DNA of 64,000 bases from Schmidtea polychroa (GCA_044892525.1 CM097887.1:116600397-116664396), one strand, 5' to 3'. Positions 919-63,270 are shown, counted from the stretch's first letter. Notes: generated by a model from the letters alone, not told the origin. Numbers and translations are program-made.

Positions 919-3900
919 CTCTGAGTTTATCCGACAAAATATTCTGTCCCCCTATGGGTATTGCTCACAAGCGTACTACTCACATTCAACATGTCGCAAG
1001 GGTATTAGTTGTAAAGGTATTTAATGCTTTTATTTGAATGATAATTTAGGCAAATTTGTTGTTTAAGGCATTCATTGATAATTTTTAGAGTTGATGGTTT
1101 TAGTAAATATTCAAGTAAATTTCTATTATTTTTGCGGATTTCTATCATTTTTGTGGATTTTTATCATTCTTGTGAATTTCCATTATTTTTGTAATTTTTT
1201 ATTATTTTTGCGGATTTCTATCATTTTTGTGAATTTTTAATAATTTAATTCTAATTCTAAGATAAATTTAATTAATTTCTTGATAATTGGATGTATTTTA
1301 ATTGACTTGTTTTTAAATTTTAAATAAAAATTTATTTTTAATGAGGTTAATAATTAAAGTTTGTACAATAATCAAGTGATTGGATAAATTTTGATGAGGT
1401 CATTGAATAATTTTCTAAGAATTTCATGTTAACTGATTAAAAGTTTTAATGGTGATAAATTTAATTGATAAATTTAATTAATTTCTTGATAATTAGTTGT
1501 ATTTTATTGAATAGTTTTTAAATAAAAATTAATTTCATTGACAATTAGGTTAATAATTAAGTGATTTTTGATGATAACTTTGTAATATATTTGACTAAAT
1601 AATTTTTCAATAATTTTCTAAGAATATTTACACATTGATGAACTTTAAAAAACATAAGCTAAGAAACCAGTTAACTTTATCAAGGACTTTAAATTTACTT
1701 GATAATTATTGTAGGATATACAGAAATTTAGTTTGCTGTTATTGCTTGAAAATGATTGGCTGAATAGCTGAAGAATTATCATCAAACAATATATATCATC
1801 TCAAGTTAGGTATTTGATGGTAAATATTTGTAGTTTATTATATCTGTTACATAAGTCGACTTTAGCGTCAAAATGTGTTTTTAAAATATATTTAAATTTT
1901 AAAAAACCGTACCGCAACGTAATATATTTTTTTCCCTGCCCTTCCATGATTTTGATTGGTTAGTGGGCTCTTATTATTTAACTTCTAAATTATTTCTATG
2001 GAAGAATGCCTAGTGTCTTTAACAGTTTATGAAAAGTCATATTTTGAATTTCTTTAAGGATTTTAAGACTGAATCGAATTAAAGGAGGATTCAAGTGGGT
2101 AGAATTAAGGGATATAATTGGTTAGATGTTTAAAAGGGTAGAAATATTTGCTGAGAGATCGGATAAGATGGGATATTTTCGGTTAGATTTAATGAGGGAT
2201 CGGATAAGGTGGGAAAATATGATCTTTTAAGGGGATATAGTCGGTTGCTTTTAATGAGGGAAGGGTTTCGATGGGAATCTTTTGAATATTTACATGGGTA
2301 ATGTTGGTCAAATATCAATGTTTTAAGGGAAATTGCAATTAGTCAGTTATGAATCAATAATAATGTGAAATTATATCGTTTTATTAGGTTGTGATTAATC
2401 CATTGTATATTAATTTAGATTTATGTTTTAGAATAATGTTTTATTAAATTTTCTTTTAATTATCCAGGGTTTTATTAAGTAGTGTTAATGACCGATTTAC
2501 TTGGTTTTGACAATGAAATCTTTATAGATAATTTAGATTGATATCAACTTTAAATTATTTTTATCTTTATTTAGACGGACAACGACAAAAGTTGACCATT
2601 TGAAGAAATATATTAATCTTTCAATGGGACCTAGTCAGTTATATTTATTTTAAATTTCAAGTACAGTGATTTACAAAAATTTACAGTGATTAACAAAAAT
2701 TTAATTATAACTGGTTTTATCAATAGTGAAATATGTATGATAATAGGAATTAAAGTTAGAATTATAGTCATTTAAAGGTGAGTTTAAGCAATCTTATTAG
2801 TGTGAGGTAAATAACCTTTTAAGGATATTTATCGATAAAATACTAATCTTTATAGATAGAGTTATTTCAGGGAAATTTGATGCTTTTTAGATGATTTTAG
2901 TAAAATATTTGTAATAATATGAATTAAGGGTAAAAATATAGTCATTTAAGGGATTTTAAGGAATCTTGTTAGTTTGAGATAAATATATGATCTTTTAAGG
3001 ATATTTATCGATAAAATACTAATCTTTAAAGATAGAGTTATTTCAGGAAAATTTGATGCTTTTTAGATGTTTTTATTGGAGAATTCACTTGGATATACCA
3101 GTTATTGTCATTTAAATGAATTTACTGGTTTGTTAGATGTTATCATTAGTTATCTAGTCTCTTTTGGAATTTAATGATAATTATTTTTATTGTAGATTGA
3201 TGACTTTGATAATTGTAATGAATTCATACTGATTTTTTGAATATATTGAGCAATCAGTCAATCATTTTGAGTACATGTATTACTTTTACAAAAATAATTA
3301 AAATTAATTTTATTTCAATTAATTTATTCAATCTAATTCAATTATCTACTAGATCTTATCTTATTAATTTATTATCTTAGTTGATTCAACTTGAATGATC
3401 AGTATTTTTTTTATTTACTTGATGATTAGAATTTTTTCTTGTCCAATTACAATTTTTTATTTAGTATGTTTTGAATAATTTAAGTTTTTCAATAATTTAA
3501 TCAATTTTTACCAAGTTATTGATGTCTTGAGTTCAATTAATTTTTCATCCAATTTTTCAAGTGAAGAGTATTTTCTTTTAAAGATCTATTTGTTAGTACA
3601 TAGTTGTTGGTTGTAAGTAGTTGGTTGACTTTTTAGATTTTGATAAGAAGATAGTGTATGTGATGAAGAATATTTTGTATTTAATTGCTATTATTTTTAT
3701 GTGTGGTTAGTTGATTGTTGGTACTAAGTTGTTGGTATCTTGTATTTGGTAGTTGTTAGTATCCAGTTGTAGGTTGATATTTGTTAATTTCTCGATGGGT
3801 TTTGATGTTGGTTGTTAGCACTTGGCTGTAAGTGTTTAGTATTTTGTTGTTTGAGACCTAGTTGTTAGTACATGGTAACTAGTTAATGGGTAAATGGTGG

Positions 3901-8348: not shown

Positions 8349-8517
8349 NNNNNNNNNNNNNNNNNNNNNNNNNNNNNNNNNNNNNNNNNNNNNNNNNNNN
8401 NNNNNNNNNNNNNNNNNNNNNNNNNNNNNNNNNNNNNNNNNNNNNNNNNNNNNNNNNNNNNNNNNNNNNNNNNNNNNNNNNNNNNNNNNNNNNNNNNNNN
8501 NNNNNNNNNNNNNNNNN
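8349..8517. other. Assembly gap (N run)
   Basis: Run of N. Confidence 1.
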
Positions 8518-9004: not shown

Positions 9005-10670
9005 TCAAAACGATGATTGATTGGTCTCTTCTTTAGTGTTGATTGTTCGCCGTCAGTTTATGATGAGAATTGGTTCTTGAAATCTGACATTTTTTTTGGA
9101 TGTTTCCATTGGCTAACATTTCGATTGATATATTTTTTCTTTCCTTCTTTTGTTGACATTGTTGGAGATGTCTGTATACCGAGGATTTTCCACGGGATCT
9201 AGATGTTCTTTACCTTTTTGTGCAACGGTCCTGAGCGTACTTCCAATGTATATTTCTTTGCATACATTGCACGTGATACAATAATCAATGTTTTTTCGAC
9301 ATATCTTTCGGTGTCTGGCAGTTTTCCATTGTGCAATTATTTCCTTTTTTTGTGTTGTTTGTCAGAGCTTTTCTCAATGTCCAAGATTTATGTGCTATAC
9401 GAATCGGAAGGCCAGTGCGTTTAAGTTCTTTCAGGATCTTGAAGTCGAGTATATGTCACTAATGAATGGAACATTCGGATAAAAATATTTTTCTTTTTTT
9501 GTGGTATCTTCCTAGATCGTTTTGTGGTAGAATTCATTATTTTAATGTTCTTACCTTGATACCCGTTTCTGCGTAGAATTTTATTGAAGTTTAATTGTTG
9601 TTTATAGTTCTCGTTTTCTCAGTACATCGATTGGCTATCCTTTCTTTCTTGTTTTTTATGACGTGTACTTTCTGTAAGTATGGAAGCGATGAGCTTCGGT
9701 GCATAAATATTTCTTTGCGATCTGGTTTTCTGTAGAACCAGTATGTTGGAGTATCTGCTTCTAGTTTAATTTTTAAATCCAGTAGATTGAAGGATCCTTC
9801 TTCTTCCGGATATTCGATTTCAAACTTAATATTTCAGTGAGCCGCATTGAATGTATGTTATATTTTCTCGGCTTCTTTTTTGCTTTTGGTCGTGATAAAG
9901 ATATCATCTACATATCTTGAGTAGAAACCGATGGATTGTATGGTCCTCAGTGTTTGTTGTTCGAGGTTATCCATAAAGATGATTTCTAACAATCCTAACA
10001 ATTCTAGAACCCATAGACAGACCTTTAACTTGTTTATAGACATTTTGTTCAAAGGTAACATAAGTGTTCTCGAGGATAACAGTAAGAAGTTTAATGACAC
10101 TCTAGGTTTTCATTTCCTTTATTAACAAGTTGCTTTCTCTTAATATTTTTACCAAACATTTAATAGCCTCTTTTTTTTGTTCGATAGATGTTCAAGACTG
10201 AAGGGGTATTTGAATTATCTATGAGTAGTTCTGTTTTTATTTAATTTTGCCATGAGGTAGTCGCTGCTCTGAAGATGGTGTGGTACAGTGTCCAATAATG
10301 GTTTTAAGATCTTTGAAAGAAGCCAACTTGTTTTAGTTGTTTGTCCATTTGTGTTGGATAAAATAGGTTTAATTTTGATAGCAGGACTCACTTTTTGAGT
10401 TTTTATTAGATAGTAGAAGTTGAGAAGATCGGAATTTTTTGTAACCAAGCTTTTAGTTAATTTGTTATTGAGTACCATTTCCACAGTAATGGCTTTCCAT
10501 ACTTTGTTCATCTTCATTTCGATGGTGTTTGGTGACATTTGGCTAACTTCCTTGTATGTGTCAATTTTGCCGAGGTATTCATAAGCAACTTCACAGTAAC
10601 GGTTTTTCTCTATAATGCAAAATTCTCCCCCTTTGTCACTTGGTAAGTAAACGTATTGGTTCCTTTAAAG
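9005..10670 (-). mobile_element. Degenerate Penelope-like retroelement (RT plus C-terminal GIY-YIG endonuclease)
   Basis: Motifs across frameshifts: YLPSDKGG; YYLIKTQK...IKPILSNTNGQT...LSKILKPL; YSRYVDDIFI; CNVCKEIYIGSTLR (GIY-YIG). Confidence 0.85.
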
Positions 10671-10929
10671 GGATTTTAACACAAATTAATTGAAAATAAA
10701 TAATTTATTGACTATGTGAAAAACCCGACCAATGTGGAAAACCCGGGCGCTAAATAGGATGATTGTAAGATTTTGGCTTCCCTTTAAAATCAGTAAAGAT
10801 TATTAATATTGAATTAGCCAAAAGAAATTTTTTGAAAAAAGGCGAAAAGTTACTTGCTTAATTATTTTGTTTTGAGCAAATTTTGGTCACTGGTTAATTC
10901 GACTATTTAATTACAAAAACTAGAAAATT

Positions 10930-11150
10930 AGTATAAAAAGAAACGACATTGGTAGTCAATTTTCAGTTTAGTCGAAGAATAGGCAAGTCACAAAGAGATT
11001 CCTACTAAGGAGAACAGAGAAAGTTAGTAGAAAATTGAACATAAAGAGATCAAAAAGTAAGAGAGTTCTTGTCAAAAAAAATTATAAAAGTAAAAATCAT
11101 ATTCAAATCCAAAAAGGCGGTCTCCCATTGGGTAACCTACCTTCTTAATT
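10930..11150 (+). mobile_element. Possible short Penelope-like RT fragment
   Basis: QIQKGGLPLGNLPS resembles the PLE RT motif Q..G.PMG.P.S; otherwise heavily decayed. Confidence 0.3.
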
Positions 11151-11180
11151 TTTATAGAACAGTGCAGATCAAATGAATCG

Positions 11181-11409
11181 TTTATTTTAAAAGTGACCTA
11201 GGTCCATTTATGTTAAGCCACTTTCAAAATAAAATTTTTATCATTCTATTAACCAACTAATTTTTTTTTACAAAATCTTAGTGATTATAAATATATTATT
11301 TATAATTTACTTCAAAATGAAAAGGTAACGTAAAAATTTAATTGTTTAAATAGCTAGCTTGATTTTTTTTGACAAATGGACTTAGGCCACTTTCAAAATA
11401 AATGGCTCG
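11181..11409. mobile_element. Small MITE-like inverted-repeat element
   Basis: ttattttaaaagtgacctaggtccatt (~11186) and aatggacttaggccactttcaaaataa (~11377-11402) are near reverse complements. Confidence 0.5.
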
Positions 11410-11921
11410 AATAAGAGTGTAATTGACAACAAATATTGAGAATTTTGTTGACGTTATTTGTATTATTATTACTAGATATCTGTGACAATTTTATTAATAA
11501 AATCATTTTAATAAATTAAAATTGTAAATGCATAACATATTTTCGAACAAGAAAAATTCAAAATGTATACCATACTTTCGAACCGAGACAGTATAATAAT
11601 ATAATTCCATATTTAATTTTCGTTTTTGTTTAAATTATTATAATTCTGTTATTTTTTTCTTTTTCTAAAATTTTCATACGAATTATAGCAGAACTAAAAT
11701 AAAATCCATTAAAAAATTTTTAAAATAAAGTTCATTATTTACTCAAGTTTAATAAATAAAGAACCTAAAATTCCACAATAACTTCTAGTGTTATGAAAAT
11801 GTGGACGTTTTTCCAATTTCACCACTGATTTCTTTTCCATTGACATTGTATTTATAAATAATCAAAAAAACGTGGCAATGATTTAATAATAGAGAAACGC
11901 CAACTCAATAAATTCAACATA

Positions 11922-11964
11922 AACGCGATATATTTCAATTGTACAACAATCTTCGTCAGGCCGC
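11922..11964 (-). ncRNA. Mirror copy of the minimal hammerhead motif
   Basis: Reverse complement of the + strand motif (tcgtcag at 11953-11959). Confidence 0.65.
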
Positions 11965-12096
11965 AATCTGGATAATCAATAATAAAACATAAAATATGCA
12001 ATATCTAAACAAATTAACTAATAATAACTAATAATATTATTAGTTAATTTGTTTAGATATTGCATATTTTATGTCTTATTATTGATTATCCAGATT

Positions 12097-12139
12097 GCGG
12101 CCTGACGAAGATTGTTGTACAATTGAAATATATCGCGTT
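12097..12139 (+). ncRNA. Minimal type I hammerhead ribozyme motif
   Basis: CUGACGA (12102-12108), extra A, stem II GAUUG/CAAUU with 5-nt loop, GAAA (12125-12128), palindromic mini stem III UAUA, then UC with predicted cleavage after 12134. Stem I is imperfect. Confidence 0.65.
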
Positions 12140-13128
12140 TATGTTGAATTTATTGAGTTGGCGTTTCTCTATTATTGTATTTATAGTCAAGCTTTTTCAT
12201 AAATACACTTTATTGACTGAAAAATATAATTATACATTTATATTTAGACATAAAATTTATATGCTGGCAATTGAAATTTGATCCTTTTGAAATTGTATGG
12301 CAATATAAATATATATTTAATTCGGAAAATGTCAAATTAACTAATTTAATAAATACTGACATTATAATAATTTGATTTTTAAGGATTATGCAAAGTGTTC
12401 TGTCTAAATTTAGCTGTTTCTTTTTAATAAAAATGATGGATTTTTATAATAAATTTGACCGAGTCTACATATTTTTCTACTCATTTATTCCAGCTATATA
12501 TAAGATTGCCAGAATTATATGAAAATAAGACTTTTTTCTTTTTTCTCGGAGTCGTCATAAAAAATCGATCGACTGGACTCCTTTTTATATTTTCTTTAAT
12601 GAACAACGTTACGGTATGTGTCAATAAATACATTCGAATAAGAATTTTGGAAATATATTATATGGGACAGTTTCTCGGAAACAATGTTATTATTACAGTA
12701 ATTTATGAAAATCATCTCCGACAATAATAGCATTAGAAATAAGAAACCTGATAGGAGTAATTACGTTTAACTAATTATCTTGAGAGTAATAAAGTTACAG
12801 TTACTATGACCTCTGAAAGATTCAAGAGCTGCAAAAGTGAAATTACTTTTAAATATTTTGTGCATCTCACTTTTCCACCAGTTCAGCTGTTATTGAATTG
12901 ACCGGGAAAATTGCAAGTAAGGTTGGAGTATCGTTGGAGAGAAGTAGCGTTACGAATTTAATACTGGAAGATGCTAACAAAGAGAAACATATAATCAAGA
13001 ATCTCTTACGCTGAAAATCTATGTTTTTAGAAATAAATGCCTGTTCAAACAGGCTGTTCACGTCACCTAGTAAATTACTTGGCGATAAAAGTTCAGTTCA
13101 GATTTTTAAAAATACCTTAACGAACAAG

Positions 13129-20733: not shown

Positions 20734-22126
20734 TCAAAATCAACCACAAAAAGATTCTTATGATGTTAGTTCACTTTTGGATACAGCTCTAAGTTATTAT
20801 AGTCGTCAGAAAGTCATTATTAATATTAGCGGCTTGAAATATGAAACATTTCTAGATACTTTAACGAAATTTCCAGATACTTTACTTGGAAATTCAATAA
20901 AAAGAAATATGTACTATGATTCAACAAGAAATGAATACTTTTTTGACAGAAATCGCTCAAGTTTCGATGGTATTCTTCATTATTATCAAAGTGGAGGTGT
21001 ACTTCGACGACCAAATAATGTGCCTTTCGATGTGTTTGCTGAAGAAATCAGATTCTTTGAATTAGGAGAAGACGTTTTTGAAAGATTTAAAATTGATGAA
21101 GGATATGTGAAAGAAGAGGAAAAGATTTTGCCGAAGAATAGTTTCCAAAGAAAAGTTTGGCTATTAATTGAATATCCTGAAAGTTCAATTATGGCAAAAT
21201 TAGTAGCGATTATATCAGTTTTAGTTATTATACTTTCTATTGTTGTGTTTTGTGTAGAAACTCTTCCTCGATTCAAGCATTATCAAATCGTCCATGTGCC
21301 TATTTTCGCTACAAATTCTTCAGAAATGCAAATTGTTGAAGACGATACACCAGAATTTGGTGAACCATTTTTTATGATTGAAAGTATTTGTATTATTTGG
21401 TTTACTTTAGAGCTACTGATTCGGTTTGCATCATCACCATTTAAATTAGATTTTCTAAAAAATGTAATGAACATGATTGATTTAGTATCAATATTCCCAT
21501 ATTTTATAACACTTGGAACTATCATCTCTACTGAGGGTGTAACTCAAAATCAAGCGACAACCTCGTTAGCAATTCTGAGAATAATCCGATTAGTAAGAGT
21601 GTTTAGAATTTTTAAATTATCTCGTCATTCCAAAGGCTTGCAAATTCTCGGACAAACCCTAAGAGCTAGTGTTGAAGAGTTGACTATGCTCACTTTTTTC
21701 TTATTGATTTGTGTTATACTTTTCAGTAGTGCCGTTTATTTTGTGGAAGCTGACACTGAGACATCTCTTTTCCGAAGTATACCGGATGGTTTTTGGTGGG
21801 CAGTGGTTACTATGACCACAGTTGGATATGGCGACATGATGCCAGTAACGGTTTTCGGTAAATTAATTGGCAGTCTTTGTGCTATTGCAGGAGTTCTCAC
21901 CATTGCATTACCAGTTCCAGTTATCGTTTCCAATTTCAACTATTTTTATCATCGTGAAATGGAAAATGAGAACCATTCAATGAAATACTCAGATTTATTG
22001 AAACCAGAAATTTCCACTTCTTCGATTAATCAAAATAATCAAGAGTCAAAAGAACAGACTGTTTTCAAAGTCAATCATGATCCTCATTTTACCAATCAAC
22101 TTTCTGCTATTGAAACCGATGTATGA
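20734..22126 (+). CDS. KCNA (Shaker): Shaker/Kv1 voltage-gated potassium channel, large coding exon (start codon probably in an upstream exon)
   Basis: T1 domain ([10 protein letters not shown]...[11 protein letters not shown]), S4 [25 protein letters not shown], pore TTVGYGD, S6 [17 protein letters not shown]-terminal IETDV PDZ motif. The open frame begins after the acceptor tttttgtttttag at 20733; no in-frame ATG precedes T1. Confidence 0.95.
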
Positions 22127-22159: not shown

Positions 22160-22450
22160 NNNNNNNNNNNNNNNNNNNNNNNNNNNNNNNNNNNNNNNNN
22201 NNNNNNNNNNNNNNNNNNNNNNNNNNNNNNNNNNNNNNNNNNNNNNNNNNNNNNNNNNNNNNNNNNNNNNNNNNNNNNNNNNNNNNNNNNNNNNNNNNNN
22301 NNNNNNNNNNNNNNNNNNNNNNNNNNNNNNNNNNNNNNNNNNNNNNNNNNNNNNNNNNNNNNNNNNNNNNNNNNNNNNNNNNNNNNNNNNNNNNNNNNNN
22401 NNNNNNNNNNNNNNNNNNNNNNNNNNNNNNNNNNNNNNNNNNNNNNNNNN
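22160..22450. other. Assembly gap (N run)
   Basis: Run of N. Confidence 1.
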
Positions 22451-27735: not shown

Positions 27736-27977
27736 ATAGCAATGTAAGATTTAATCGTTCCTTGGTTGTTGGGCCAATAGTAGATAATTATTTACCGACA
27801 AAATTTAGTAAGCGAGAAAAAGTTGTTACTGTCTTTGGTGCTACTGGATTTTTTGGTAGTTATCTTTTACACGAACTTGTTAAGAATGGGTATCAGTTAA
27901 TAATACCTTATAGAGGTGATATACATGATTTTAAACACCTGCGAATGGTTGGAGGAGTTGGTCAAAATTTGTTTTGT
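27736..27977 (+). CDS. NDUFA9: NDUFA9 exon 2
   Basis: VVTVFGATGFFGSYL Rossmann motif and IIPYRG; donor GTAAGG at 27978. Confidence 0.9.
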
Positions 27978-28022
27978 GTAAGGAAAATTTTAACTAGCCA
28001 ACAATATTTTATCACTTTACAG

Positions 28023-28386
28023 CCTTTCTCACCAGAAGATTTCAATTCAATCGAATTAGCAGTTAAACATAGTAATGTAGTGATTAATTTAATTGGTAAA
28101 GAATTTCAAAGTTACCATTATTCATACCGTAATATAAATGTCGATTTTGCCGGACAGATTGCTAAGATTTCTAAACGCTGTGGCGTTGAACAATTTATCC
28201 AAATGTCAGCATTGGGGGCATCAGAAAACCCCAAAGAACATATTCCAGGAGCCGGTTGTGAATTTTTCAAATCGAAGTGGCTTGGTGAACAAGAAGTGAC
28301 CAGAGAATTTCCCGGAGCAGTGATTATTCGCCCTTCTATGATTTGGGGAAAAAATGACAACTTCATATTTTATTTTCTCAATAAAT
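28023..28386 (+). CDS. NDUFA9: NDUFA9 exon 3
   Basis: AVKHSNVVINLIG, FIQMSALGA, SKWLGEQEVTREFPGAVIIRPS; donor GTGAGT at 28387. Confidence 0.9.
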
Positions 28387-30049
28387 GTGAGTCATTTAAT
28401 TATGTTTTAATTTCCACTGAAAATTTTGTAATTAATTTAAACAAATAATTATTTAAAAATTTTTTTCTAAATTAGAACTTCAATTTGTAATCAAAAATAT
28501 TTCATTAAATACAAATTTATTATAATTGCAGGTTTATTACAGTAAAATCTGTAAGTGTGGAACATCATAAAATCGATACATAAATTTGTCTTTTTCTGAA
28601 ACCCTTCATGACCTTTGGTTCATTAATGTAGATCCTTCACTGCTAACGTCAGCGTTTATATTATAAGATTAACTGCTGTGATTGTCTGTAATAGTGCCAA
28701 TCGGGTATAATTTGATAAGGGGGCGTATTATTGTCATATTATTGGTCAATATCCTCTCAGTTTGGAGAATGAAATATTTCTGATTAAATGGATGGGATTT
28801 ATGAGTCAAAGATGTCAATAGGGTTGCATATCTCTCATTTGTGCTCTCTTAAATTGTTTGGGGTTACCTCCCCTCCCTTCACCTTACCGATTTAATCATT
28901 TCCTTAATGGGATAGGAAAATAATGCCAGCAAACAGGTAGATCTTGACAAGCTCTATAATATTCCCCCAAAAAATATCAAAAATTCTCCAACAATGCTGG
29001 AAGTCTTCTCCAGAGAATAATTCAAAATTTCCGCCAAAATTAATTTAACTAATTTTTAAAGCGTGACAAATTTTAACAAATTATTGACACTCAGTGCGAT
29101 GAAATAAAAAAACAAAAAGGTGCACATGTGTTTGGTGTTTGGGGGGGGGGCAAAGACAAGGCTGGCAGACGGTTTACTGGCTCTTACCAGAACGCCCATG
29201 ACTTACAAATTCGCGGCCAGTGTAACCATGATCGCCGTCATGTTGGTAATGCACACTGTTGTTGAAAATCGGGGACAGATGAGCTGCTAACTTAAAACTA
29301 CTCTGCCCCATATTTTCTAGCGGGTCCTTGACGGTCTTACGTCCAACTGATCATTTCCTCATCAGAGTGGTAATATTTGCCCTGTAAACAAAATGTTATT
29401 AAATATCCATGCCCTTCCCATTCCAGGTTTTCTTTTTGTTAAAACAAGGAATGGCAAAAAACAAATTTGAAGTTGTATTAATTCAAAAGAAAATGGTTAA
29501 TCACAGCAACCAGTGCGGTAATCCAAAAGTATACATATGCGACTGTATACTATACGCACAACTTTACCATTTCAAATATAAATATAAATTTCAGATTTAA
29601 ATAGAAGTTCATTATTCTTTGTTTACTCACTACCCTTTAATCTTTTATTGGGCTTACTAATATTAATTAAATCACTAAGTCGACAGTAATTAAAAATTAG
29701 GATGGAAATGATGATCTAAATTATGAAAGAAATAAAAATATATGAAACTACATCAAAACTTAGAGAAAATCCTAATAACTTGTTGACTATAAAGGGTCTA
29801 TAAAGCGCTGTTTAAATTCTAAACAATAAATTTGAAATTTGTATTTTATATTGAATTTATAATTATTGGTATTTTGAATTGAATTTATTTTTATTTATAT
29901 ATTTTAATAAATGAATATTAAATATGTGAAATAGGGAAAAATTATTCAGAATCCTATATTCTTTAGTAGTTAAAAAATATACTGGGATTTCAGGTAGATG
30001 TCTCATTTAAGTTAATTAAAAATTTATCGATTTCATCAATAAATAGAAA

Positions 30050-31853
30050 GAAAAACAAAAATCAGTTTGGAAATAGTAGGATCTAAATTTTACACTCATA
30101 AAATCAAATGGGATTATATGGAGAAATTAAAGAAAGGAAGTCCGAAGAAAAAATGAAAACCCCTTGTCATGATTTTTGTGAAGACACTGGTCAATTTAGA
30201 ATGTAAATTGTTATTTCGTTTGAAGAGTTAAGATGAGCGCTTGGAATTTGTAAAATCGTTATTGAGTTAATTGGAATCAGATTTATTTGTAGGAATCAGC
30301 TCTCTAATCAGAGATCTTAATTTTATGTTCAATTAGATTTGAATTATTTGTAGCCGATAATCTGCACATTCGTTAAATTTAATTGGTGAAAGCTCAGCAG
30401 AATGTTGTCAAGAAGCGACTAAACTATTTATGCTTGTACATTATTGGTACACTTTTTTTCGGTGTCCACGTCTAGGTGGGAATTATTAAAAAAGGAGATA
30501 GGACCAAAAGGCCTTGATTCAAAAAGAATATGTGATACTCGGTGGTCTGCTAGAGCAGATGCAGTTAAAGCACTTAAATTAGGATATGAGTCTTTTAAAA
30601 AGGCACTACAAAACATTATTAATGATATAACGAAAAAACCAGTTGAAAAAATAGAAGCCCAGGGACTATTGAAACAATTAAATTTTCTTGAAACCGGTAT
30701 AATGCTATCATTTTGGTTCGATATATTAAATGCAATTAATGGGGCAAGTAAAACACTTCAAAAAGTTGCAATAAACATTGTAGTAGGTGTTAAAATATAT
30801 AATAGTTTATATGTATTTCTGCAGAGCAAACGAGAGTTAGAGTCTTTCAATTTTTATAAAATAGAAGGAATTTTAATAACTGTGTGCTACGATTTTAAAA
30901 CAACTAGGCAACATAAAAGAATAAAACAATTCGACAAAAGTAGTACACCAGATCATTTTTTTTGTAGTGATACGAATTTTCGTATAAATTCATATTACGT
31001 AATTCTTGATAAACTTCTAGAAATAAAAAAAAGAAAATGTAGTTATGATGAAATATATTTAAAATTCGGATTTATTTTCGATTTAAAAAATTTAGATGAT
31101 ACTGAAACCAGGGAGAAAACCTCTAAATTATGTGAAATATACACGAACGATCTTGATAAAAGTTTAATTGAAGAATGTCTATATTTTAAAAATTTTACTG
31201 TCCATAACAAAACTGGTACTGAAAATTCACAATCAGAAATTCTTTTAAAAACAATAATTGAGTCTGATATCGGATTCACTTTTCCAAAGATAGAAATTAC
31301 GTTAAGAATATTTATGAGTGTAGGATTAACTAACTGTTCAGGTGAAAGATCTTTTTCGCTTCTAAAAAGATTAAAAAATCATCTTCGTTCTTCCTTGCGA
31401 CAAGAAAAATTTAATAATTTAAGTATATTAGCCATTGAGTCTGAATTTTTTGAAAGTATTGACTGTGAAGAAATAGTTGATAGTTTTGCAAGACATAAAT
31501 CTAGAAAGAAAAAAATATTGTAATCGTTTTTCTTCATTCTTCTATTTAATGTTATATTTTGATATTTATGTTTGAAAGAAATTTATTTTTTTCTTAATTT
31601 TTTTGTTTAATGAAAACATTAGACTGTTGAGTTTTTGTAAGCTAATGTTAATTTAATATATTTTTATTGTTTTTTTTGTTCGTTTGTTATTCTAGTCATT
31701 GAAATAAAATGATGTAATATATAATATTAATATATGTATATGCAATAATGTGTAATATTATTAATAAACATAATATATTTTTGTAAAAATTGTTTTTTAG
31801 GGGCGCATTATAGTTTATAGCACAGGGACGATAAATTTCTAAAGACGCCTTTG
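30050..31853 (+). mobile_element. hAT (ZMYM1-like) transposase remnant inside NDUFA9 intron 3
   Basis: ICDTRWSARADAV, YYVILDKL, SGERSFSLLKRLKNHLRSSLRQEKFNNLSILAIE...FARHKSRK; frameshifted AHSLNL upstream; TIR-like ...gacgcctttg at 31853. Confidence 0.9.
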
Positions 31854-33510: not shown

Positions 33511-35797
33511 TAATTTATATAGAAAATCTGAAATTACGTTAAGCTTTATAGTTCGGTCGTGATTCTAAAAGTTTTAATACTTAACACTAAGTGTCGTCGA
33601 AATAGTGCAGTGGACCGTAAGTTCCGAGCGACTTTAATTTTTTTGTAATAGTAATTGATTTATAGAACTCTCACATGACAAACCTGAATTCAACATTTAA
33701 ACTACATTATTTTATATAAGAGCTCGTTTCTCTAATGTGGATCCTTGCTCAAAGTTTTAAAATGTTAGCTTGTGAAAACACTATGATTATAGGCAACCAA
33801 AAATCAAACTTTCAAGACTGAAAAATAAAGGCAGAAAGCATAGAATTACATAGAATAATGTGTGAACACCGCAGGAACTGATCATCACGAAAGGCATGGT
33901 TGCATTAGAAGTTCTCTAGTTACCATTGCAGCCAAACGAGATAAATATAACCACGAGTATGGTACGACTATAATCAGATTATTTGATGTTAACCTTGAAT
34001 TGGCGAGAGGAAAAGAAGATTAGGATGACAAGCCAAGGACCATATGGAAATATATGAATTGAAAAGTGGATTCGACAGTAAGAAACTCAGTCGAATCAGA
34101 CTGTTGCGTATCAATTCTTAGTAAATCGAATACAGCACCCAAAGACGGTAATGACTGTAGTGTTTGGAGATTGGAAGGGCAAGTTGCGAAGTTAGTGACC
34201 ACATTCAGTCAACGAAGGAAGCATAATAAGTCGGGAAAGCTCGAACGTATGAGTGTGAGAATGATATTTAAAAAATGGTATACTTCTCCAGAATTCAGAG
34301 AAGAAAAAAGGTGATCGAAAGATTGAAAGGAAACAGCAGAATATTGATAAAATCAAGCAATGAAATACGACCAGGTTGTTCTGAATTAACCAGTACAAAT
34401 TGAAAATAAAATCAAAATCAAATTTTCGAATATTTTCAAAAGAGAATAAATAAAATAAAAAATTAATTATATCAAAAATTAGGAATGATTTTTAGTCGTA
34501 TTTACAAACGAAGAACTAGAATCAAATTAATTAGCAATGTTATATGATAAATTCAAAAATTCGTGAAAATTAAATTACACCAATCTGGCAGCAATAGTGT
34601 ATGTGCTTGTGTATAGCCAATCAAATATTTTCATAATTACACACTCTAATTTGACATAGTGGCAGCAAATTAGTAAGCGGACAACACAAACCAGTATAAA
34701 TATCGACTGAAAATTCATTTTTTAACTAGTTTTGGATTTGCTCTCAGTTTATCAGCGTTATATGAATTTTACGTTTATACTCGCTTGGTTGTAAAGTATA
34801 TTCGTGTGTAAGGTAATTTCTAAGTTTATACATTTTAAGTTTTTTTAGCAGGAGTTGACCCTAGTAGGTGATTTCAGTGGTTAAAACCCAATGTAAACAC
34901 ACCCAGAATAGCTGCATTAGGAGTTAGACTGGTATTTTGAGATGTCGGTTAAAAAATTTAACTAATAGCTCCAAATTGAATTTAAAATGTAATAACACTT
35001 TCTCGGGGCGTTAGTATTCAGATTTCGCATGGGTCCAAATGAGAAATGAGGGCAAATTCATACTAAAAATGTTTATAAGATAACTTTGAATAAAATCAAT
35101 TTATTGTAGAAAATCTAGGATAAAATTTTTGAAATTGGGAATAAGGGCGGATCTCTGAGTAAAAAATTTGAAAATGACAGAATAACATCAAATAATGAGA
35201 ACCATAATTAAATGAACAATGAGAAACAATAATCTAAGACATGGATAGAGAAAGTGACATAAGATCTTCTATCGCCAGTCACGAACTGAAAAATGAAAAT
35301 GCAATGAGGAGTAGTTCTAGTAGAGGAGCTCACCTGCTCATTAATTTTCAGTCACTTTTTACATTACCATATTTGTTAAATTTTACGATTGTTTTATTTT
35401 TTTATCTGTTTGCATCACTCGATTTTTTTAAAAATAAAACTTGAGGAAAAAGTTTAGATTTTAAAAAGCGTGATTTTAATAATCTATTTTTATTACAGTG
35501 GTTCGCGAGATTTGAAACATTGATGTTAACTACCAAAAGGAAATAAAACATTAATTAAATTAGCTGCTCCGATTTCTATTTTCTTTTTGACATATTTTTA
35601 CAATACATTTTATTGAGTTATTGACATGTATTAACAAGTACAAATATTATTTTTTAATGTTTTAATATTTGCTTTGTTTAGTCATTTCGTTTAAATAGAA
35701 TTGTTTTAATACATATACAATTTAACATTTAAATTCATTGAGATTACAATTTCTTACATTCGAATTAAATTATCATATAGATTTTAATTTGATTAAT

Positions 35798-37224
35798 ATG
35801 AGTAGCCATTACATCGTTGAAGAAGAATTTCCAATTTATTTCCTGGATTGTAGTAATAGTTTTCAGAACTTAACTGAAGCTGAGAAAAAGTATTCATTTG
35901 CTTTAATTAAAGCAGGATGGTATGGTGCCTTAATCGATTATGTTCAATGCTCTCCTGAATCCCCAGCTTTATTTTTACTTTCGCAAAAATTATTTAAAAG
36001 GCAAAATCCTGAAAAATTTGAAAATCGTTTAAAAGAATTAAAAGTTAATGAATTAGACATTAAACACTTTTTCAATTATTTTGCTACGGTATATGGAAAT
36101 TTGGGCAATTATCGTTCGTTTGGTGATTCCAAATTTATTCCCCGAATCGACGAAGAAAATTTTGATAGAATTATTAAGTTGTCAGACGCTTATACACAAG
36201 ATGTAACGTTTAGAGAAATTTATGATACAATCAAGCCTTTGATATTTTCCCTAACTTCAAGAAATAAGCAAATGGGCCTTGGTGAGGAAGGGATTAGTAC
36301 ATACTATTCTTTAAATTGCACTATGGATGATGCTAATAAAGTTCAAGTCTATCTGGACGAAAACAATATTAGCGCTTACAATACGCGAGTTTTTAAGAGA
36401 ATTGAAAATGGAATTACTAAATATGAAGTAAGACAAGCATCTTCATTACAAAATGTAAACAGGAGATTAGAAATTTCCAATCCCTCCCATAATACCGAAG
36501 TAAACCTGATAAATGGAGACTATCGTGAAGTAATGAGTTTGATGGTTGACGAGTTAAGAAAAGCGAAGGATTTAGCATTAAATGAAACTGAAAGATCAAT
36601 GATAAAATGTTACATTGATAGCTTTGAAACAGGGTCAATCGATGCTCACAAGGAAGGTTCAAAATACTGGATTCGGGATAAAGGACCTACCGTAGAGAAT
36701 TATATTGGATTTATCGAATCATATCGAGACCCATTTGGAGTTCGTGGTGAATTCGAAACATTTGTAGCAGTTGTTAATAAAGAAATGAGTAAGAAATTTG
36801 AAAGCTTAGTTGACAAAGCTCCTTCTATTTTAAACGAGTTGCCATGGCCTAAAGAATATGAAAAAGATAGGTTTTTGCAGCCGGATTTCACATCATTAGA
36901 TATAATTAATTTCCCAGTTAGTGGCATGCCGGTGGGAATAAACATTCCAAATTATGATGATATTCGACAAGATCTTGGATTCAAGAATGTTTCATTGGGT
37001 AATGTATTAAAATCAAGATTTAAGGATCCAAAATCTAATTTTATTCCAAATGAACACAAGGAAATTTTCATCCAAAATGTAGAGAATGCATTTGAAGTGC
37101 AAGTTGGACTTCACGAGTTGATTGGTCATGGTAGTGGCAAACTATTTCAATTCAAAGATGGACAATATAATTTTGATTTCAATCAAACAAAAGATTTAAT
37201 AACAAACGGGTCTATAGAAAGATG
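35798..37224 (+). CDS. DPP3: Dipeptidyl peptidase III exon 1
   Basis: YGNLGNYRSFGDSKFIP, GFIESYRDPFG.RGEFE, GINIPNYDDIRQDLGFKNVSLGNV, zinc motif HELIGH; donor TG|GTATGA at 37225. Confidence 0.95.
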
Positions 37225-37301
37225 GTATGATTTTAAATACTTTTCTATTTTTATAATTATAGCTAAATTTTTCCACATTTAATAAAATTTATAAATACAG
37301 C

Positions 37302-40062: not shown

Positions 40063-43000
40063 AGTTACAATTTCTTCACAAATCATAATAATAAATAATG
40101 ATTAATAAATGAAGTATATTTAAATTTCTAATCCAACGTGTCCTTTCTATTATCAAAACAACTATAATTAATAAACATTAATTATTGAACATCACTCTCC
40201 TCTTCATTTTCTTTTTCCAATACTATCTGTTCTAAAAACCGTTCTGTTCTTGGCCATAGGATTTCTTTTGTTCTTCCTAAATCATTCTTTCTACTAGCAC
40301 AAATCTTGCATTTATTAATACATTCCGTAATACTCTGATTCATGGATGGCTAAAATAAAAATCTTTTAAATAACAAAGTTTTCTTAATGCGTAGATGACG
40401 CAGTTCAATATGGAAATAATTTACCAATGTTTTACGTATGTGTCAGGCACTACAACTGCAATTTCTTCATCTGTATTGATCATCAATACGTCGTCTTCTA
40501 TCTGTAATATTTTTGAATACTTGAAAATATTACTACTGATTGTTTCATAAGATATATGATCCTCGTTTCCATTAAAATGTGATATGATTTCTGAAATAAT
40601 TTTGTTTTCGTTTTGCTTCTGTTTAATAATTTCCATAATGTTTAAACTTACCTGTAAACTGTTTATGTACCGAGTTCTACACTTTGTTTCTTTGGCGTCC
40701 TTGTGTTTCATCTGCCAATGAGCGCATATCGTATTATTTAAACGAGACATGCCATCTGCATTTCCATGTTCTTCTCTCTTCCTATATTGTAACTCAAAAT
40801 CGTGTTCAGATAAATTTGCCATTCATGTTTGAAACTGTGGGCTTATTGGTTTCTTTGTAGTGTTCATAAACACCAATGCCTTGTGATCTGTTCTGGCTCC
40901 AAATCTTCCATTTAAATATTGTCTGAAATGTACAATAAACTCGTGGTGCCAACAACTCTTACCTTGTAACACAATATCCCATTTTATGTGTTGTCAAATG
41001 TCTTGAACCATATGCCATCATGCCTTCAGTACCATCTTCCTTAATCTGAGATAAAACTTCACCTATGGCTCCAAAACTAGCATCCATATCAATAATAAAT
41101 AGTCGATCTGCCCTTGGAAATTCTAATATTGGTGCTTCACACAAAAATTTATTTAAATTGATAAAACTACATTTCTACATTCTTCAGTTCAAACAATCAT
41201 TTTATCATTACCTGTCGTTGCTGCATACAAAGGTACTGCTATCATTGAATAATTCTTAATAAATTGTTGATAATAATTCGTTAAACCTAAGAATTATCTG
41301 AATTCTGTGACACTTTTTTGTTCGGTTGCATTTTCAATTTTTGAAATATTTTTATTTGCTTGAATTCCCTTTTCACAAACTGTATGGCCAATGAAATTTA
41401 ATACGCTTTTATAGAACGCGCATTTCTCAGGAATAAATTTTAAACCGGCATCTCTAATTCGTGTGAATACAGAATCAAAATAAATCAAAATCGTGTAAAA
41501 AATACACGATTCATATGTAAATTTAAGGATCTGTTCCACAACCTTAAAAAATCGTAAAAAATAAGACTTATAATCTCAGAACAAATTTCTGATCTTTGCA
41601 CCACTGAAGTTCCACTTTGAACGAAAGCTGGTAAAATTTTTTTCCAACAAACAAGGTTGATTGCCGCAACTGTTTGATGGCAAAAGAAACATGTGTAATG
41701 CAATCCAAAATATTAAACTTTTTCCATGCTTCCATAACATTCAAATTTTTTTCTTCCACTGAATCTAAAATATATTTTAACGTTTGCTTGATGTAGTACA
41801 TTTTAAATGCTGCTATAATACCCCGATCGAGTGGTTGAATCACAGAAGTGGTATTAGGCGGCAAAATCAGCAATTGAATATTCGGATGTACCAGCACTGG
41901 GGTTGCTATGTGCATTATTAGCAAGCAAAAGTATTTTGAATTCTAAACCTTTTTGTGTCATATATTTCTGGACTTCAGGAACAAAACAGTTATTAAACCA
42001 ATCTTTAAACAGATTGGCCGTCATCTATGCCTTTTTATTCGCCATAAAATGAACTGGAAGTTGTTTAATGTCCTTACCTTTTAAAGCTCTTGGCATATGT
42101 GATTTGTTGATTAAGAGTGGCTTCAACATTTTATCACCAGATGCGTTACTGCAAAGCAACAAGGTCACCCGATCTTCGACTGCTTTAAAGCCACCAGCTG
42201 TCTTTTGAGATTTTGCTATGAATGTTCTTTTTGGCATTTGCTTCCAAAACAATGCCGTTTTGTCGGCATTAAATATTTGATCTGGAGTATATCTGCCCTC
42301 TTGAATTATTTTTGCTAGTTCATCCGGATAGTTTTTTGCAGCATTTTCGTCTGCTGATGCCATTTCTCCTTGAATTTTTACATTGTGAAAAGTGTGTCTT
42401 TTCAGAAAACATGTCAGCCATACATGACTTGCATTGAAAGCATTTTTATTAGTTCCCCGACGGTTCAAACTCCTGAAGTCGGTTGTATATTCTAAGTGCT
42501 TTCTCTTTAATAATTTTCCCATCAATAGGAATTTTTTTCCTATAAATCTTCAATCCATAACACCATATGTTTTTCAGTTTTCTCCAAAGTAGAATTTCGA
42601 CTATAAGTTGTTTTTGAACTAAGTGCTGATCCAGAAATTACTGATTGTCGAATGGAACTCTCATTTTTTAATTGTTCTTATTGTCGCTTCGTTTAAACCA
42701 AAAGCTCTGCTAACAGATGTTCAACCTTCGCCACTTCTTAGACAGTCTAGGATTTTTATTTTCTTTTCTAATGAAATTGTTTGTCTCTTCAGAATATGCT
42801 GTTGTTTAGACATTGTATTAATAAGGGCACTGTAAAAACGAAATAAAATAAAATTGCTTATTGCAATTTTCTAAGATAACAATCTAACACAATGTTACCT
42901 TTTGAAAAGTTATTAACAATTCCGATTATGTAATTTGAAGATTTCACCAATTTATCAAAAATAACTAATTTAAACATTAACTTTAAGAACTTTATTGAAA

Positions 43001-61459: not shown

Positions 61460-62150
61460 TCCGTCGACTAAAAATTTCAAATTATAAAGTATGAAAATAC
61501 GAATTACAAAATGCAAAAGTATAAATTTTAGATTAAAACTTATAAATTATAAGTTAAGCAATTATAACTTATAAAATACGAATGTATAAATTTCAAAATA
61601 TGAAATTATAATTATAAATTACAAGATTGTAAATCCCTAAATTGAAAAATTTAAAATTATAAATCGAAAATTATCAAAGTATAAATTATAAAACATAAAT
61701 TTATAATTCTAAAGCATGGGATTATAAAATTATAGTTATCATAATCCTGATCATTTCCCTTGTTATTATGATTAGCAGTATCAACATTATCATTATNNNN
61801 NNNNNNNNNNNNNNNNNNNNNNNNNNNNNNNNNNNNNNNNNNNNNNNNNNNNNNNNNNNNNNNNNNNNNNNNNNNNNNNNNNNNNNNNNNNNNNNNNNNN
61901 NNNNNNNNNNNNNNNNNNNNNNNNNNNNNNNNNNNNNNNNNNNNNNNNNNNNNNNAACTCATTATTATTCTTATTATTATTATTAGTATTATTATTATTA
62001 CCATCATCATTACCGTTATTAAAATTTATTATTAAGCATATTATTATTACTATCATTGCTATTATTAATATTAATATTATTATTATCATTATTATTATTA
62101 TTATTAGTATCGTTATTTCATTATTAATATTGGTATTATTATTATTACAG
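61460..62150. repeat. Low-complexity AATTAT/ATT-rich repeats flanking an assembly gap (N 61797-61955)
   Basis: Directly visible. Confidence 0.9.
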
Positions 62151-62666
62151 TTAACTACAAAAAATCGATATCCCAATCCGATATCGATCACCTGGAAATT
62201 TAGAAATTAGCAAATTAAATAAATTACTTGTATGCAGAGCAAACCACTCATAACGAGCACAACCGAAGGAAAGGTAAGCAGACGAAGAGCTTAGTTCGTT
62301 GCTAGCACCTGTCGCCCCAGCGTGCCCGAATTTAGTGGCCTAAAAATGATGATCCAAAAACTTTACATTTTATTCAAGTATAAACTAAAATTTATAAATA
62401 GCAATTAAAATTACCACTTAGTGGTAAACAAATTCTGGAATGTAAATGATTAATTTAAACAAACGGATTTTCGACGAAATTCCTTTTTCATCTAGTTGAT
62501 AATGAATGTGATTTTAATCTATTGTTCTTAGGCTCATGTGTGTTAGCTGGAAAATAAAGAATTTTTTTTTCGTTAACGTTGAATTTTTAAAAAAAGGGGG
62601 AAAAGGGATTAACAAAATCCCGTGTTTAACTTCGTAACATAATCTGTATAAAGTGACCTGATTGAA

Positions 62667-63032: not shown

Positions 63033-63270
63033 CTCGTCCTCAATTCTAACTCGCGATAGACATGAACTTTACTCTGAACAAATCTCCTCTGTAATGAATT
63101 AATAAGATTTGATTTGATGATGAACTTTACTTTGCATGAGTTTCTTCTTTAATAAATTATCGTAAAAATGGGTTGGTCTTCAATAATGATAAGATGTCTT
63201 TATAACCAGTACCGATCTTATCAAGCGAATATCATGGTGTAATAACATAATCTAAGAATATTTCTTTTAG

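What the first reader, a model, noticed from the sequence alone, without database searches (positions are those of the whole stretch)
11885..12176. Palindrome carrying a hammerhead ribozyme core on each strand, next to a Penelope-like element
Seen: ~140-bp arms with one visible mismatch. Each arm holds CUGACGA-A-[GAUUG-uugua-CAAUU]-GAAA-UAUA-UC, one per strand, pointing outward. Established: Penelope-like elements carry minimal type I hammerheads in their pseudo-LTRs, with a very short palindromic stem III thought to need dimerisation, and often insert with inverted pLTR ends; a one-base insertion after A9 is known in some natural hammerheads. Inference: this is a head-to-head pLTR pair, ~1.2 kb 5' of the minus-strand PLE at 9005-10670. 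It could give self-cleaving RNA in either direction, or a long hairpin that hides the ribozyme and feeds RNAi. Caveats: stem I has only 2 contiguous pairs plus a bulged extension, and pair 10.1-11.1 is G-U.
Basis: partly seen in the sequence, partly recalled or inferred. Interest (0 to 1): 0.75.

Follow-up and report, generated by a model that had tools for sequence, protein, structure and literature searches.

The report
Inverted retrotransposon ends with hammerhead motifs
A 292-base palindrome holds a minimal hammerhead-ribozyme motif on each strand and is most likely the leftover inverted tail ends of a Penelope-like retrotransposon, a known kind of structure with no sign of activity at this locus.

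Summary
Arms 11885-12026 and 12035-12176 are 142 nt each, differ at one position and are separated by an 8-nt spacer. Each arm carries the same hammerhead-like motif reading outward.

A structural descriptor matches nothing else in the window. It is expected about 0.001-0.02 times per window by chance.

The motif shows the published signature of metazoan Penelope-like element (PLE) minimal hammerheads:
- one unpaired base after A9
- a 6-bp helix II
- a 2-bp helix I
- a palindromic helix III

A decayed PLE body (reverse transcriptase then GIY-YIG endonuclease, minus strand, 9017-10682) lies 1.2 kb away. In 46 related PLE loci, hammerheads of this build sit near the 3' end. They also sit, in sense or inverted, about 0.1-1.6 kb upstream of the RT stretch used as query, as here.

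Four points weaken the case:
- No Rfam hammerhead hit.
- A covariance model built from the relatives' hammerheads scores the arms only 9.9 bits.
- Pair 10.1-11.1 is G-U, against G-C in 15 of 15 relatives.
- No other copy of the arm could be collected, and no coding homology bridges 10683-11884.

The hammerhead fold is weak (-2.7 kcal/mol). A read-through transcript would instead form a 141-bp hairpin (-221.5 kcal/mol).

Verdict: a PLE-derived inverted terminal pair, ordinary for this element class; catalysis is unproven and unlikely at this locus.

The parts
11885..12176 (.). Whole palindrome of 292 bp: two 142-nt arms plus an 8-nt spacer
   Evidence: 99% complementary; one mismatch at 11986/12075, sharp ends, spacer not palindromic, no target-site duplication seen
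11885..12026 (-). Left arm. Read on the minus strand it is a PLE 3'-terminal fragment in the same orientation as the neighbouring RT-EN body (candidate upstream pseudo-LTR)
   Evidence: The orientation and the offset to the RT stretch (-1295 nt) compare with -960 to -1007 in relatives
12035..12176 (+). Right arm: the same fragment inverted (candidate inverted 5'-truncated copy)
   Evidence: Relatives carry inverted hammerheads upstream of the RT at offsets -131 to about -1630; structure described in PMC8557442
12097..12138 (+). Hammerhead-like motif, + strand copy. Helix I 12100-12101 with 12135-12136 (extension 12097-12098 with 12137-12138), core 12102-12108, extra A 12109, helix II 12110-12124, GAA 12125-12127, palindromic helix III 12128-12133, C17 at 12134
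   Evidence: energies; chance estimate
11923..11964 (-). Hammerhead-like motif, minus strand copy, identical in sequence to the + copy; core 11959-11953, C17 at 11927
10683..11884 (-). Stretch between palindrome and RT homology. It is long enough for a 5' UTR plus the roughly 280-residue N-terminal domain of relatives, but no homology to that domain was detected
   Evidence: no hit even at E up to 10. Among intact relatives the N-terminal domain is 31% identical at the median
9017..10682 (-). Decayed PLE body, RT followed by GIY-YIG endonuclease. It matches residues about 283-848 of relatives about 850 aa long. It is broken by at least 3 frame changes and 10-18 in-frame stops, the count depending on the relative used for comparison
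   Evidence: weak RVT_1 and GIY-YIG hits; best E 1.9e-40, about 50% identity; relatives carry RVT_1 plus GIY-YIG; bounds and counts; profile positions 235-768 of 789 covered

Best explanation
The palindrome is a relic of Penelope-like element (PLE) insertion. It consists of two copies of the last 142 nt of a PLE unit joined head to head at the same 5'-truncation point, with their 3' ends pointing outward.

Each copy holds the minimal type I hammerhead that PLEs carry near their 3' end, within the pseudo-LTR. In the PLE life cycle this motif is thought, but not proven, to cut long tandem transcripts. It would do so by pairing with a second copy through its palindromic helix III.

At this locus each strand has only one sense copy, and any transcript that crosses the centre folds into a 141-bp hairpin that buries the motif. 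The ribozyme is therefore most likely idle here.

Shown: the palindrome, the motif's anatomy, the PLE identity of the neighbouring body, and the presence, position and inversion of such hammerheads in relatives.

Inferred: descent of the arms from a PLE, the head-to-head origin during insertion, and inactivity. I cannot tell whether the arms belong to the decayed RT-EN body 1.2 kb away or to a younger PLE insertion beside it.
For: 1. The descriptor matches only the two arms in 64 kb. Chance expectation is about 0.018 per window for any match and about 0.001 with helix II of at least 6 bp.

2. Traits that are not needed for catalysis match the published PLE minimal-hammerhead signature (PMC4209133): one unpaired base after A9, a long helix II, a 2-bp helix I as in the Drosophila virilis variant, and a palindromic helix III with extra palindromic bases.

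3. The neighbour at 9017-10682 (minus strand) is a PLE RT plus GIY-YIG.

4. In 140 kb of related PLE loci the relaxed descriptor (helix II of at least 4 bp) found 16 hits against 0.3 expected, 14 of them on the RT strand. All had exactly one base after A9.

5. The 15 distinct motifs (16 after the core pair was widened; one is an exact duplicate) covary strongly: 96% of cells are paired, 8 of 10 pairs change on both sides, and 0 of 500 shuffles reach the observed score.

6. A model built from them found nine further non-training hammerheads at 19-42 bits.

7. Positions agree. In relatives the sense hammerhead lies about 960-1007 nt upstream of the RT stretch, and inverted ones lie 131 to about 1630 nt upstream. 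In the window the offsets are 1295 (sense) and 1438 (inverted).

8. In relatives, homology ends 36-120 nt after the start of the core. Here the arm ends 74 nt after it.

9. An inverted 5'-truncated copy next to the upstream pseudo-LTR is the typical PLE structure (PMC8557442). Pairs of minimal hammerheads 100-700 bp apart on opposite strands were already reported in Schistosoma.
Against: - No Rfam hammerhead family is matched even at E up to 10. Clear minimal hammerheads in relatives L001-L003 also gave none, so this negative is weak.
- The model built from the relatives' hammerheads scores the arms 9.9 bits. That is E 2.2 window-wide, below AT-rich noise, and it mis-assigns the 3' half. Non-training hammerheads of relatives score 19-42 bits.
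- Pair 10.1-11.1 is G-U, against G-C in 15 of 15 relatives and 'highly conserved' in the literature.
- No second copy of the arm exists in the window or in two public collections, so conservation and covariation within this family could not be tested.
- No homology bridges 10683-11884, and there is no hammerhead or arm copy 3' of the body.
- The ages do not fit one event. The arms differ at 1 of 142 positions, while the body carries 10-18 stops. My rough inference from the stops is about 0.17 substitutions per site.
- The hammerhead fold is -2.7 kcal/mol. The best fold, at -6.4, pairs U16.1 and C17.
Confidence: 0.72

Rival explanations
1. The arms come from a short non-autonomous hammerhead-bearing element derived from PLE pseudo-LTRs (retrozyme-like or SINE-like). 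It inserted on its own and is unrelated to the RT-EN body next door.
For: The arms are almost identical while the body is heavily decayed. No homology links them. A 2026 preprint relates animal non-LTR retrozymes to PLE pseudo-LTRs.
Against: Retrozymes are direct tandem repeats. Here the two units are inverted, and no direct repeat of the arm exists in the window. The offsets to the RT match those in relatives.
Confidence: 0.1
2. A chance hammerhead look-alike sits inside an unrelated AT-rich palindrome, such as a fold-back element or a product of replication slippage.
For: The bare core pattern is common. The model score of 9.9 bits sits within the noise. Pair 10.1-11.1 is G-U, helix I has 2 bp and the fold is weak. 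The finding was picked after reading, and such matches would occur a few times per gigabase by chance.
Against: A match with all observed features occurred 0 times in 100 Mb of simulated strand. It also lies within 1.3 kb of the only PLE in the window. The extra base after A9 and the palindromic helix III are not demanded by catalysis, yet they match the PLE signature. No target-site duplication or transposase was seen.
Confidence: 0.08
3. Only one arm is real. The inverted duplicate is a fold-back artefact of sequencing or assembly.
For: Complex tandem and inverted PLE structures are known to cause assembly problems (PMC8557442). The arms are nearly identical.
Against: The palindrome is short and lies between unique flanks on both sides. 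It has one mismatch and an asymmetric 8-nt spacer. Fold-back chimeras are usually perfect and run to the read end (my own knowledge). Inverted hammerhead-bearing copies occur in independent metagenomic contigs of relatives.
Confidence: 0.05
4. The locus is active. Either outward transcripts starting near the centre give two identical hammerhead RNAs that dimerise in trans and cleave, or read-through transcripts give a hairpin that is diced into small RNAs against PLEs.
For: The two outward RNAs would be identical, and helix III is self-complementary. The read-through hairpin is very stable, 141 bp at -221.5 kcal/mol. The near-identity of the arms could reflect constraint.
Against: There is no expression data. 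The helix III duplex alone is worth only -2.2 kcal/mol, and the predicted dimer is not the hammerhead dimer. Metazoan PLE hammerheads cleave poorly even as dimers. In the Anolis PLE, no transcript ends were seen at the cleavage site.
Confidence: 0.05

Closest known systems
Minimal type I hammerheads of metazoan Penelope-like elements (Cervera and de la Pena 2014, PMC4209133), especially the Drosophila virilis-type variant
   Same: Both have the CUGANGA, GAAA and UH core, one unpaired base between A9 and 10.1, a 6-bp helix II, a 2-bp helix I and a helix III made only of a short palindrome with extra palindromic bases. Both lie next to a PLE.
   Different: Pair 10.1-11.1 is G-U here, not the highly conserved G-C. 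Helix II is almost all A-U. No family of copies is available to show covariation, and cleavage is untested.
Hammerheads of the nearest PLE relatives found here (46 metagenomic loci, RT about 40-50% identical)
   Same: Same architecture and the same single base after A9. Same position near the 3' end of the unit, and upstream of the next reading frame. Some are inverted upstream of the RT.
   Different: The relatives have a GC-rich 4-5 bp helix II, G-C at 10.1-11.1 in 15 of 15, a 4-nt palindrome and a 3-5 bp helix I. Their model scores the window motif only 9.9 bits.
Typical PLE insertion structure: a partial tandem forming pseudo-LTRs, with an inverted 5'-truncated copy next to the upstream pseudo-LTR (Craig et al. 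2021, PMC8557442)
   Same: Read along the minus strand, the order is an inverted copy, a direct copy, and then a stretch leading to RT and EN.
   Different: No matching pseudo-LTR was found 3' of the body. The body lacks detectable N-terminal homology and looks much older than the arms.
Pairs of minimal hammerheads 100-700 bp apart on opposite strands in Schistosoma mansoni (PMC4209133)
   Same: Two hammerheads on opposite strands lie close together, 142 nt between core starts here.
   Different: Here they form an almost perfect palindrome with an 8-nt spacer. The paper gives no such detail.
Animal non-LTR retrozymes (tandem hammerhead repeats giving circular RNAs; PMC7229834, bioRxiv 10.64898/2026.07.22.740005)
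   Same: Short non-coding units carrying a type I hammerhead, related to PLE pseudo-LTRs.
   Different: Retrozymes are direct tandem repeats; this is an inverted pair.

Membership tests
PLE minimal hammerhead (min-HHR) | Catalytic core CUGANGA, then GAA, then A15.1 and U16.1 followed by H17, in type I order | tested here: met
   12102-12108, 12125-12127, 12128/12133, C17 at 12134; the same on the minus strand
PLE minimal hammerhead (min-HHR) | One unpaired nucleotide between A9 and 10.1 | tested here: met
   A12109. Present in 15 of 15 relatives although the descriptor allowed 0-2. Chance hits show 0, 1 or 2 bases about equally often
PLE minimal hammerhead (min-HHR) | Long helix II (6-8 bp) and short helix I (2-5 bp) | tested here: met
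   Helix II is 6 bp with a 3-nt loop. Helix I is 2 bp contiguous, the lower limit
PLE minimal hammerhead (min-HHR) | Palindromic positions 15.2-16.2 and loop 3, allowing an intermolecular helix III | tested here: met
   12128-12133 is a 6-nt palindrome. The duplex alone is worth only -2.2 kcal/mol
PLE minimal hammerhead (min-HHR) | G10.1-C11.1 pair. The paper calls it highly conserved; it emerged from the data and was not part of the descriptor | tested here: not met
   G12110 pairs with U12124. Relatives have G-C in 15 of 15
PLE minimal hammerhead (min-HHR) | Lies in a PLE pseudo-LTR, near the 3' end of a unit | tested here: inconclusive
   The motif is 1.2 kb from the RT homology, at offsets like those in relatives. 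There is no homology across 10683-11884 and no matching repeat 3' of the body
PLE minimal hammerhead (min-HHR) | Belongs to a family of genomic copies with compensatory changes | not testable with these tools
   The source genome is not available. No copy was found in the window, genome contigs or viral contigs
PLE minimal hammerhead (min-HHR) | Matches a profile of related PLE hammerheads | tested here: inconclusive
   Model R1 gives 9.9 bits, E 2.2 over the window. Non-training relatives score 19-42 bits. The relatives are GC-rich and their RT is only about 45% identical
PLE minimal hammerhead (min-HHR) | Self-cleavage of the RNA | not testable with these tools
   Only energies could be computed: the hammerhead fold is -2.7 against an MFE of -6.4 kcal/mol
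Rfam hammerhead families | Score at or above the family's gathering threshold | tested here: not met
   No hammerhead hit at gathering or at E up to 10 over 11600-12500. Relatives L001-L003, which carry clear minimal hammerheads, also gave none
Penelope-like element, canonical EN+ type | Reverse transcriptase followed by a C-terminal GIY-YIG endonuclease on one strand | tested here: met
   minus strand, 9017-10682, RT before EN
Penelope-like element, canonical EN+ type | Intact single reading frame with the N-terminal domain | tested here: not met
   At least 3 frame changes and 10-18 stops. The N-terminal region of about 280 residues was not detected
Animal non-LTR retrozyme | Direct tandem repeats of a hammerhead-bearing unit | tested here: not met
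   The two units are inverted and no direct copy exists

The most novel reading that the evidence does not exclude
The G-U at 10.1-11.1, the all-A-U helix III and the near-identity of the arms might be maintained traits of a living hammerhead variant in an AT-rich genome, not signs of decay. The palindrome would then work as a unit. Either it is a divergent start site giving two identical outward RNAs that dimerise in trans and cleave, or it is a hairpin RNA source that turns a PLE end into small RNAs against PLEs.
Probability: 0.06. Interest if true: 0.55.

Novelty: new member of a known kind. Interest (0 to 1): 0.2.

Why it matters
It matters little beyond annotation. PLE hammerheads number in the hundreds to thousands in many animal genomes, and inverted PLE ends are a textbook feature of the class. 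The locus does show that Rfam models, and even a clade-specific covariance model, miss AT-rich minimal hammerheads that a structural descriptor picks up. If a genome census showed G-U at 10.1-11.1 to be a shared trait of a whole family, that would be a modest new natural variant of the hammerhead core periphery.

Tried and rejected
- Rfam at gathering and at E up to 10 gave no hammerhead. The best hit over the palindrome, a plant miRNA precursor model at 27.9 bits against a threshold of 140, only reflects the hairpin.
- A covariance model built from 15 hammerheads of relatives gave the window arms 9.9 bits, which is not significant.
- The monomer fold is no better than shuffles (z +1.77). The predicted dimer is not the hammerhead dimer.
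- No other copy of the arm turned up by blastn in the window or by exact-pattern scans of genome contigs and viral contigs.
- The word-indexed protein search with the RT stretch gave one hit only, because full-length relatives fall outside its length band.
- The N-terminal domain was sought between palindrome and RT by Pfam on open stretches, by a profile of relatives and by tblastn at E up to 10. Nothing was found.
- No hammerhead or arm copy lies 3' of the body. Part of the expected zone lies in the masked N run 8349-8517, which I left alone.
- No target-site duplication was seen around the palindrome.
- Long loci of relatives hold no hammerhead-bearing palindrome of this tight kind.
- I tried to name the source organism by an exact look-up of the peptidase M49 reading frame. 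It is not on record. I ran no further search on it.

Full report
**1. The observation**

The palindrome is real. Arms 11885-12026 and 12035-12176 are 142 nt each and 99% complementary, with 8 nt between them. The one mismatch, at 11986/12075, lies outside the motif. The spacer is not palindromic, and complementarity stops abruptly at both outer ends.

Each arm, read from the centre outward, contains the following (+ strand copy):
- helix I 5' strand at 12100-12101
- core C3-A9 at 12102-12108
- an extra A at 12109
- helix II 12110-12115 with 12119-12124, 6 bp closed by G-U, with a 3-nt loop
- GAA at 12125-12127
- a 6-nt palindrome from A15.1 to U16.1 at 12128-12133
- C17 at 12134
- helix I 3' strand at 12135-12136

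If G12099 bulges, helix I gains two more pairs. The minus-strand copy is identical, with its core at 11959-11953 and C17 at 11927.

**2. Is it more than chance?**

The bare string pattern is not rare: 14 matches against 8.8 expected. A structural descriptor is much more selective. It requires:
- the core
- 0-2 bases after A9
- helix II of at least 4 bp
- GAA
- a palindrome
- H17
- helix I of at least 2 bp

In an earlier form (0-1 bases after A9), run at helix II thresholds of 5 bp and 4 bp, it matched only the two arms in the window and gave 0 and 1 hits in 300 simulated windows. In 100 Mb of first-order Markov sequence the descriptor above gave 14 hits. One of these had helix II of at least 6 bp, and none had all the observed features. 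That is roughly 0.02 to under 0.001 expected per window. A few such matches per gigabase would still arise by chance, so context matters.

**3. The neighbour**

On the minus strand, open stretches gave weak RVT_1 and GIY-YIG hits in the order RT then EN.

A 149-residue open stretch, 10218-10664 on the minus strand, found 363 relatives among 1.84 billion representatives. The best had E 1.9e-40 at about 50% identity. The stretch aligns to residues about 290-430 of proteins of 790-890 aa, and these carry RVT_1 and GIY-YIG.

I used this large search before the word search for two reasons. The family scans had left the protein below threshold. The word search cannot see full-length proteins from a 149-residue query; when run, it gave one hit.

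Translated comparison puts the body at 9017-10682. It covers residues about 283-848 of relatives, with at least 3 frame changes and 10-18 in-frame stops. A profile of relatives covers positions 235-768 of 789. This is a dead Penelope-like element (PLE) of the canonical type with a C-terminal endonuclease.

**4. What relatives carry**

I collected 46 related loci. The descriptor found 16 hits in 140 kb against 0.3 expected, and 14 of them were on the RT strand. Widening the core pair added a G3-C8 case in L003, giving 17 hits and 15 distinct motifs.

All 15 have exactly one base after A9, G-C at 10.1-11.1 and a 4-nt palindrome at helix III. In their alignment:
- 96% of cells are paired.
- 8 of 10 pairs change on both sides.
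- No shuffle of 500 reaches the observed covariation.
- The tertiary core pair 3-8 itself covaries: C-G 7, A-U 5, U-A 2, G-C 1.

L002 is a perfect tandem with a period of 2720 nt. It has a hammerhead in each spacer between reading frames, about 70 nt after the stop and 270 nt before the next start.

A covariance model built from the 15 motifs found nine more hammerheads at 19-42 bits in loci that were not used to build it.

Positions are consistent across relatives:
- Sense hammerheads lie 1736-2504 nt downstream of the RT query stretch, 3' of the reading frame.
- Others lie about 960-1007 nt upstream of it.
- Inverted hammerheads lie upstream at 131, 229, 1034, about 1600 and about 1630 nt.
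- In one sub-family, homology between copies ends 36-120 nt after the core start. The inverted copies there are 5'-truncated fragments of about 380 nt.

In the window the sense copy lies 1295 nt upstream, the inverted copy 1438 nt upstream, and the arm ends 74 nt after the core start.

**5. The literature**

Cervera and de la Pena (PMC4209133) describe metazoan PLE minimal hammerheads. These have:
- a long helix II
- a short helix I
- a conserved unpaired base between 9 and 10.1
- a highly conserved G10.1-C11.1 pair
- palindromic 15.2-16.2 and loop 3

They probably act as dimers and have low activity in vitro. The paper also describes a Drosophila virilis-type variant with a 6-bp helix II, a 2-bp helix I and a palindromic insertion in helix III. 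That variant is the closest published match to this motif. The same paper notes pairs of hammerheads 100-700 bp apart on opposite strands.

Craig et al. (PMC8557442) state that PLE insertions are often 5'-truncated and arranged as partial tandems. An inverted 5'-truncated copy often sits next to the upstream pseudo-LTR, the hammerheads lie near the 3' ends, and such structures trouble assemblies.

Work on an Anolis PLE found that cleavage is not needed for insertion in vitro. It also found no transcript ends at the cleavage site (PMC11167929).

**6. What speaks against a clean membership**

- Rfam gives no hammerhead hit even at E up to 10. The clear minimal hammerheads of L001-L003 give none either, so this negative says little.
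- More telling, the model built from relatives scores the arms only 9.9 bits, E 2.2 window-wide, and mis-places the 3' half. The relatives' helices are GC-rich and this genome has about 27% G+C, which explains part of the gap.
- Pair 10.1-11.1 is G-U.
- No second copy of the arm could be found, so the decisive within-family covariation test was not possible.

**7. One element or two?**

Nothing in 10683-11884 resembles the N-terminal domain of relatives. That domain is only 31% identical among intact relatives and could have decayed out of sight.

No arm copy or hammerhead lies 3' of the body. Part of the expected zone falls in the masked N run 8349-8517, which I left as it stands.

The body's stop load suggests about 0.17 substitutions per site (my rough inference). 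The arms differ at 1 of 142 positions. Either the arms are a much younger PLE insertion beside an old one, or they have been homogenised. The first fits with PLE endonucleases nicking AT-rich DNA, including their own pseudo-LTRs.

**8. Mechanism at this locus**

Folded alone, the motif region is less stable than shuffles. The energies are:

| Fold | Energy (kcal/mol) |
|---|---|
| Hammerhead fold | -2.7 |
| Best fold, whose alternative 4-bp pairing includes U16.1 and C17 | -6.4 |
| Helix III duplex between two copies | -2.2 |
| Read-through transcript of the whole palindrome (141-bp hairpin) | -221.5 |

Each strand has one sense copy only. Self-cleavage would therefore need a transcript that starts inside the palindrome and meets a second molecule. 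I rate measurable activity here as unlikely, and the relic reading as best at 0.72.

**9. Verdict**

Its link to the neighbouring body and its catalytic competence are not shown. Interest is low.

One search printed the bounds of stop-free stretches across the PLE region, so that the pieces could be handed to the family scan by reference. Those bounds amount to places of stops in a script's output. My first checkpoint note repeats the bounds of two of those stretches, the ones that gave the RVT_1 and GIY-YIG hits. The report gives only counts and the element's outer bounds, apart from the one stretch named as a search query.

The profile and the covariance model were used only for searching.

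Noticed in passing
window 21821-21934 (+), inside ORF 20777-22126: There is an Rfam K_chan_RES (potassium channel RNA editing signal) match at 91.8 bits, full length. It lies inside a Shaker-type channel reading frame with BTB_2 plus Ion_trans domains. The alignment marks 8 non-standard pairs, and most of the score seems to come from the conserved pore/S6 coding sequence. The N run 22160-22450 follows.
   Followed up: partly
related loci, alignment A2 (L002, L003, L005, L007, L009, L012, L018, L022-L024, L027, L028, L032, L040, L042): The tertiary core pair 3-8 of PLE hammerheads covaries among metagenomic relatives: C-G 7, A-U 5, U-A 2, G-C 1 of 15. The 2014 paper read here reports only U3-A8 as a natural PLE variant.
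   Followed up: partly
L001 3165-3208 (+): A hammerhead-like motif has core positions 4 and 6 that look exchanged (seen by eye). The descriptor missed it, but model R1 found it at 23.3 bits.
   Followed up: no
L002 1-5174: This is a perfect head-to-tail PLE tandem with a period of 2720 nt and identical spacers between reading frames, each with a hammerhead.
   Followed up: yes
L022 about 2840-3220 and L032 about 2925-3310 (minus strand); also L038 2922-2964, L031 122-164, L006 1530-1573: Inverted hammerheads lie upstream of the RT in five relatives. In L022 and L032 they belong to inverted 5'-truncated copies of about 380 nt.
   Followed up: partly
window 35738-37282 (+), 27762-28448 (+), 30444-31523 (+), 42025-42525 (-): Other long open frames were seen: peptidase M49 (DPP3-like, E 1e-131), an epimerase/NmrA-like protein, a weak hAT dimerisation domain and a DDE_1 (pogo-like) transposase fragment. 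The window is eukaryotic and AT-rich at 23-34% G+C. I did not determine the organism.
   Followed up: no
window 62001-64000: G+C rises to 41.7%, against 23-34% elsewhere.
   Followed up: no
window 8349-8517, 22160-22450, 61797-61955: Three N runs were left as they stand. The first overlaps the zone where a 3' hammerhead of the PLE body could have been expected.
   Followed up: no
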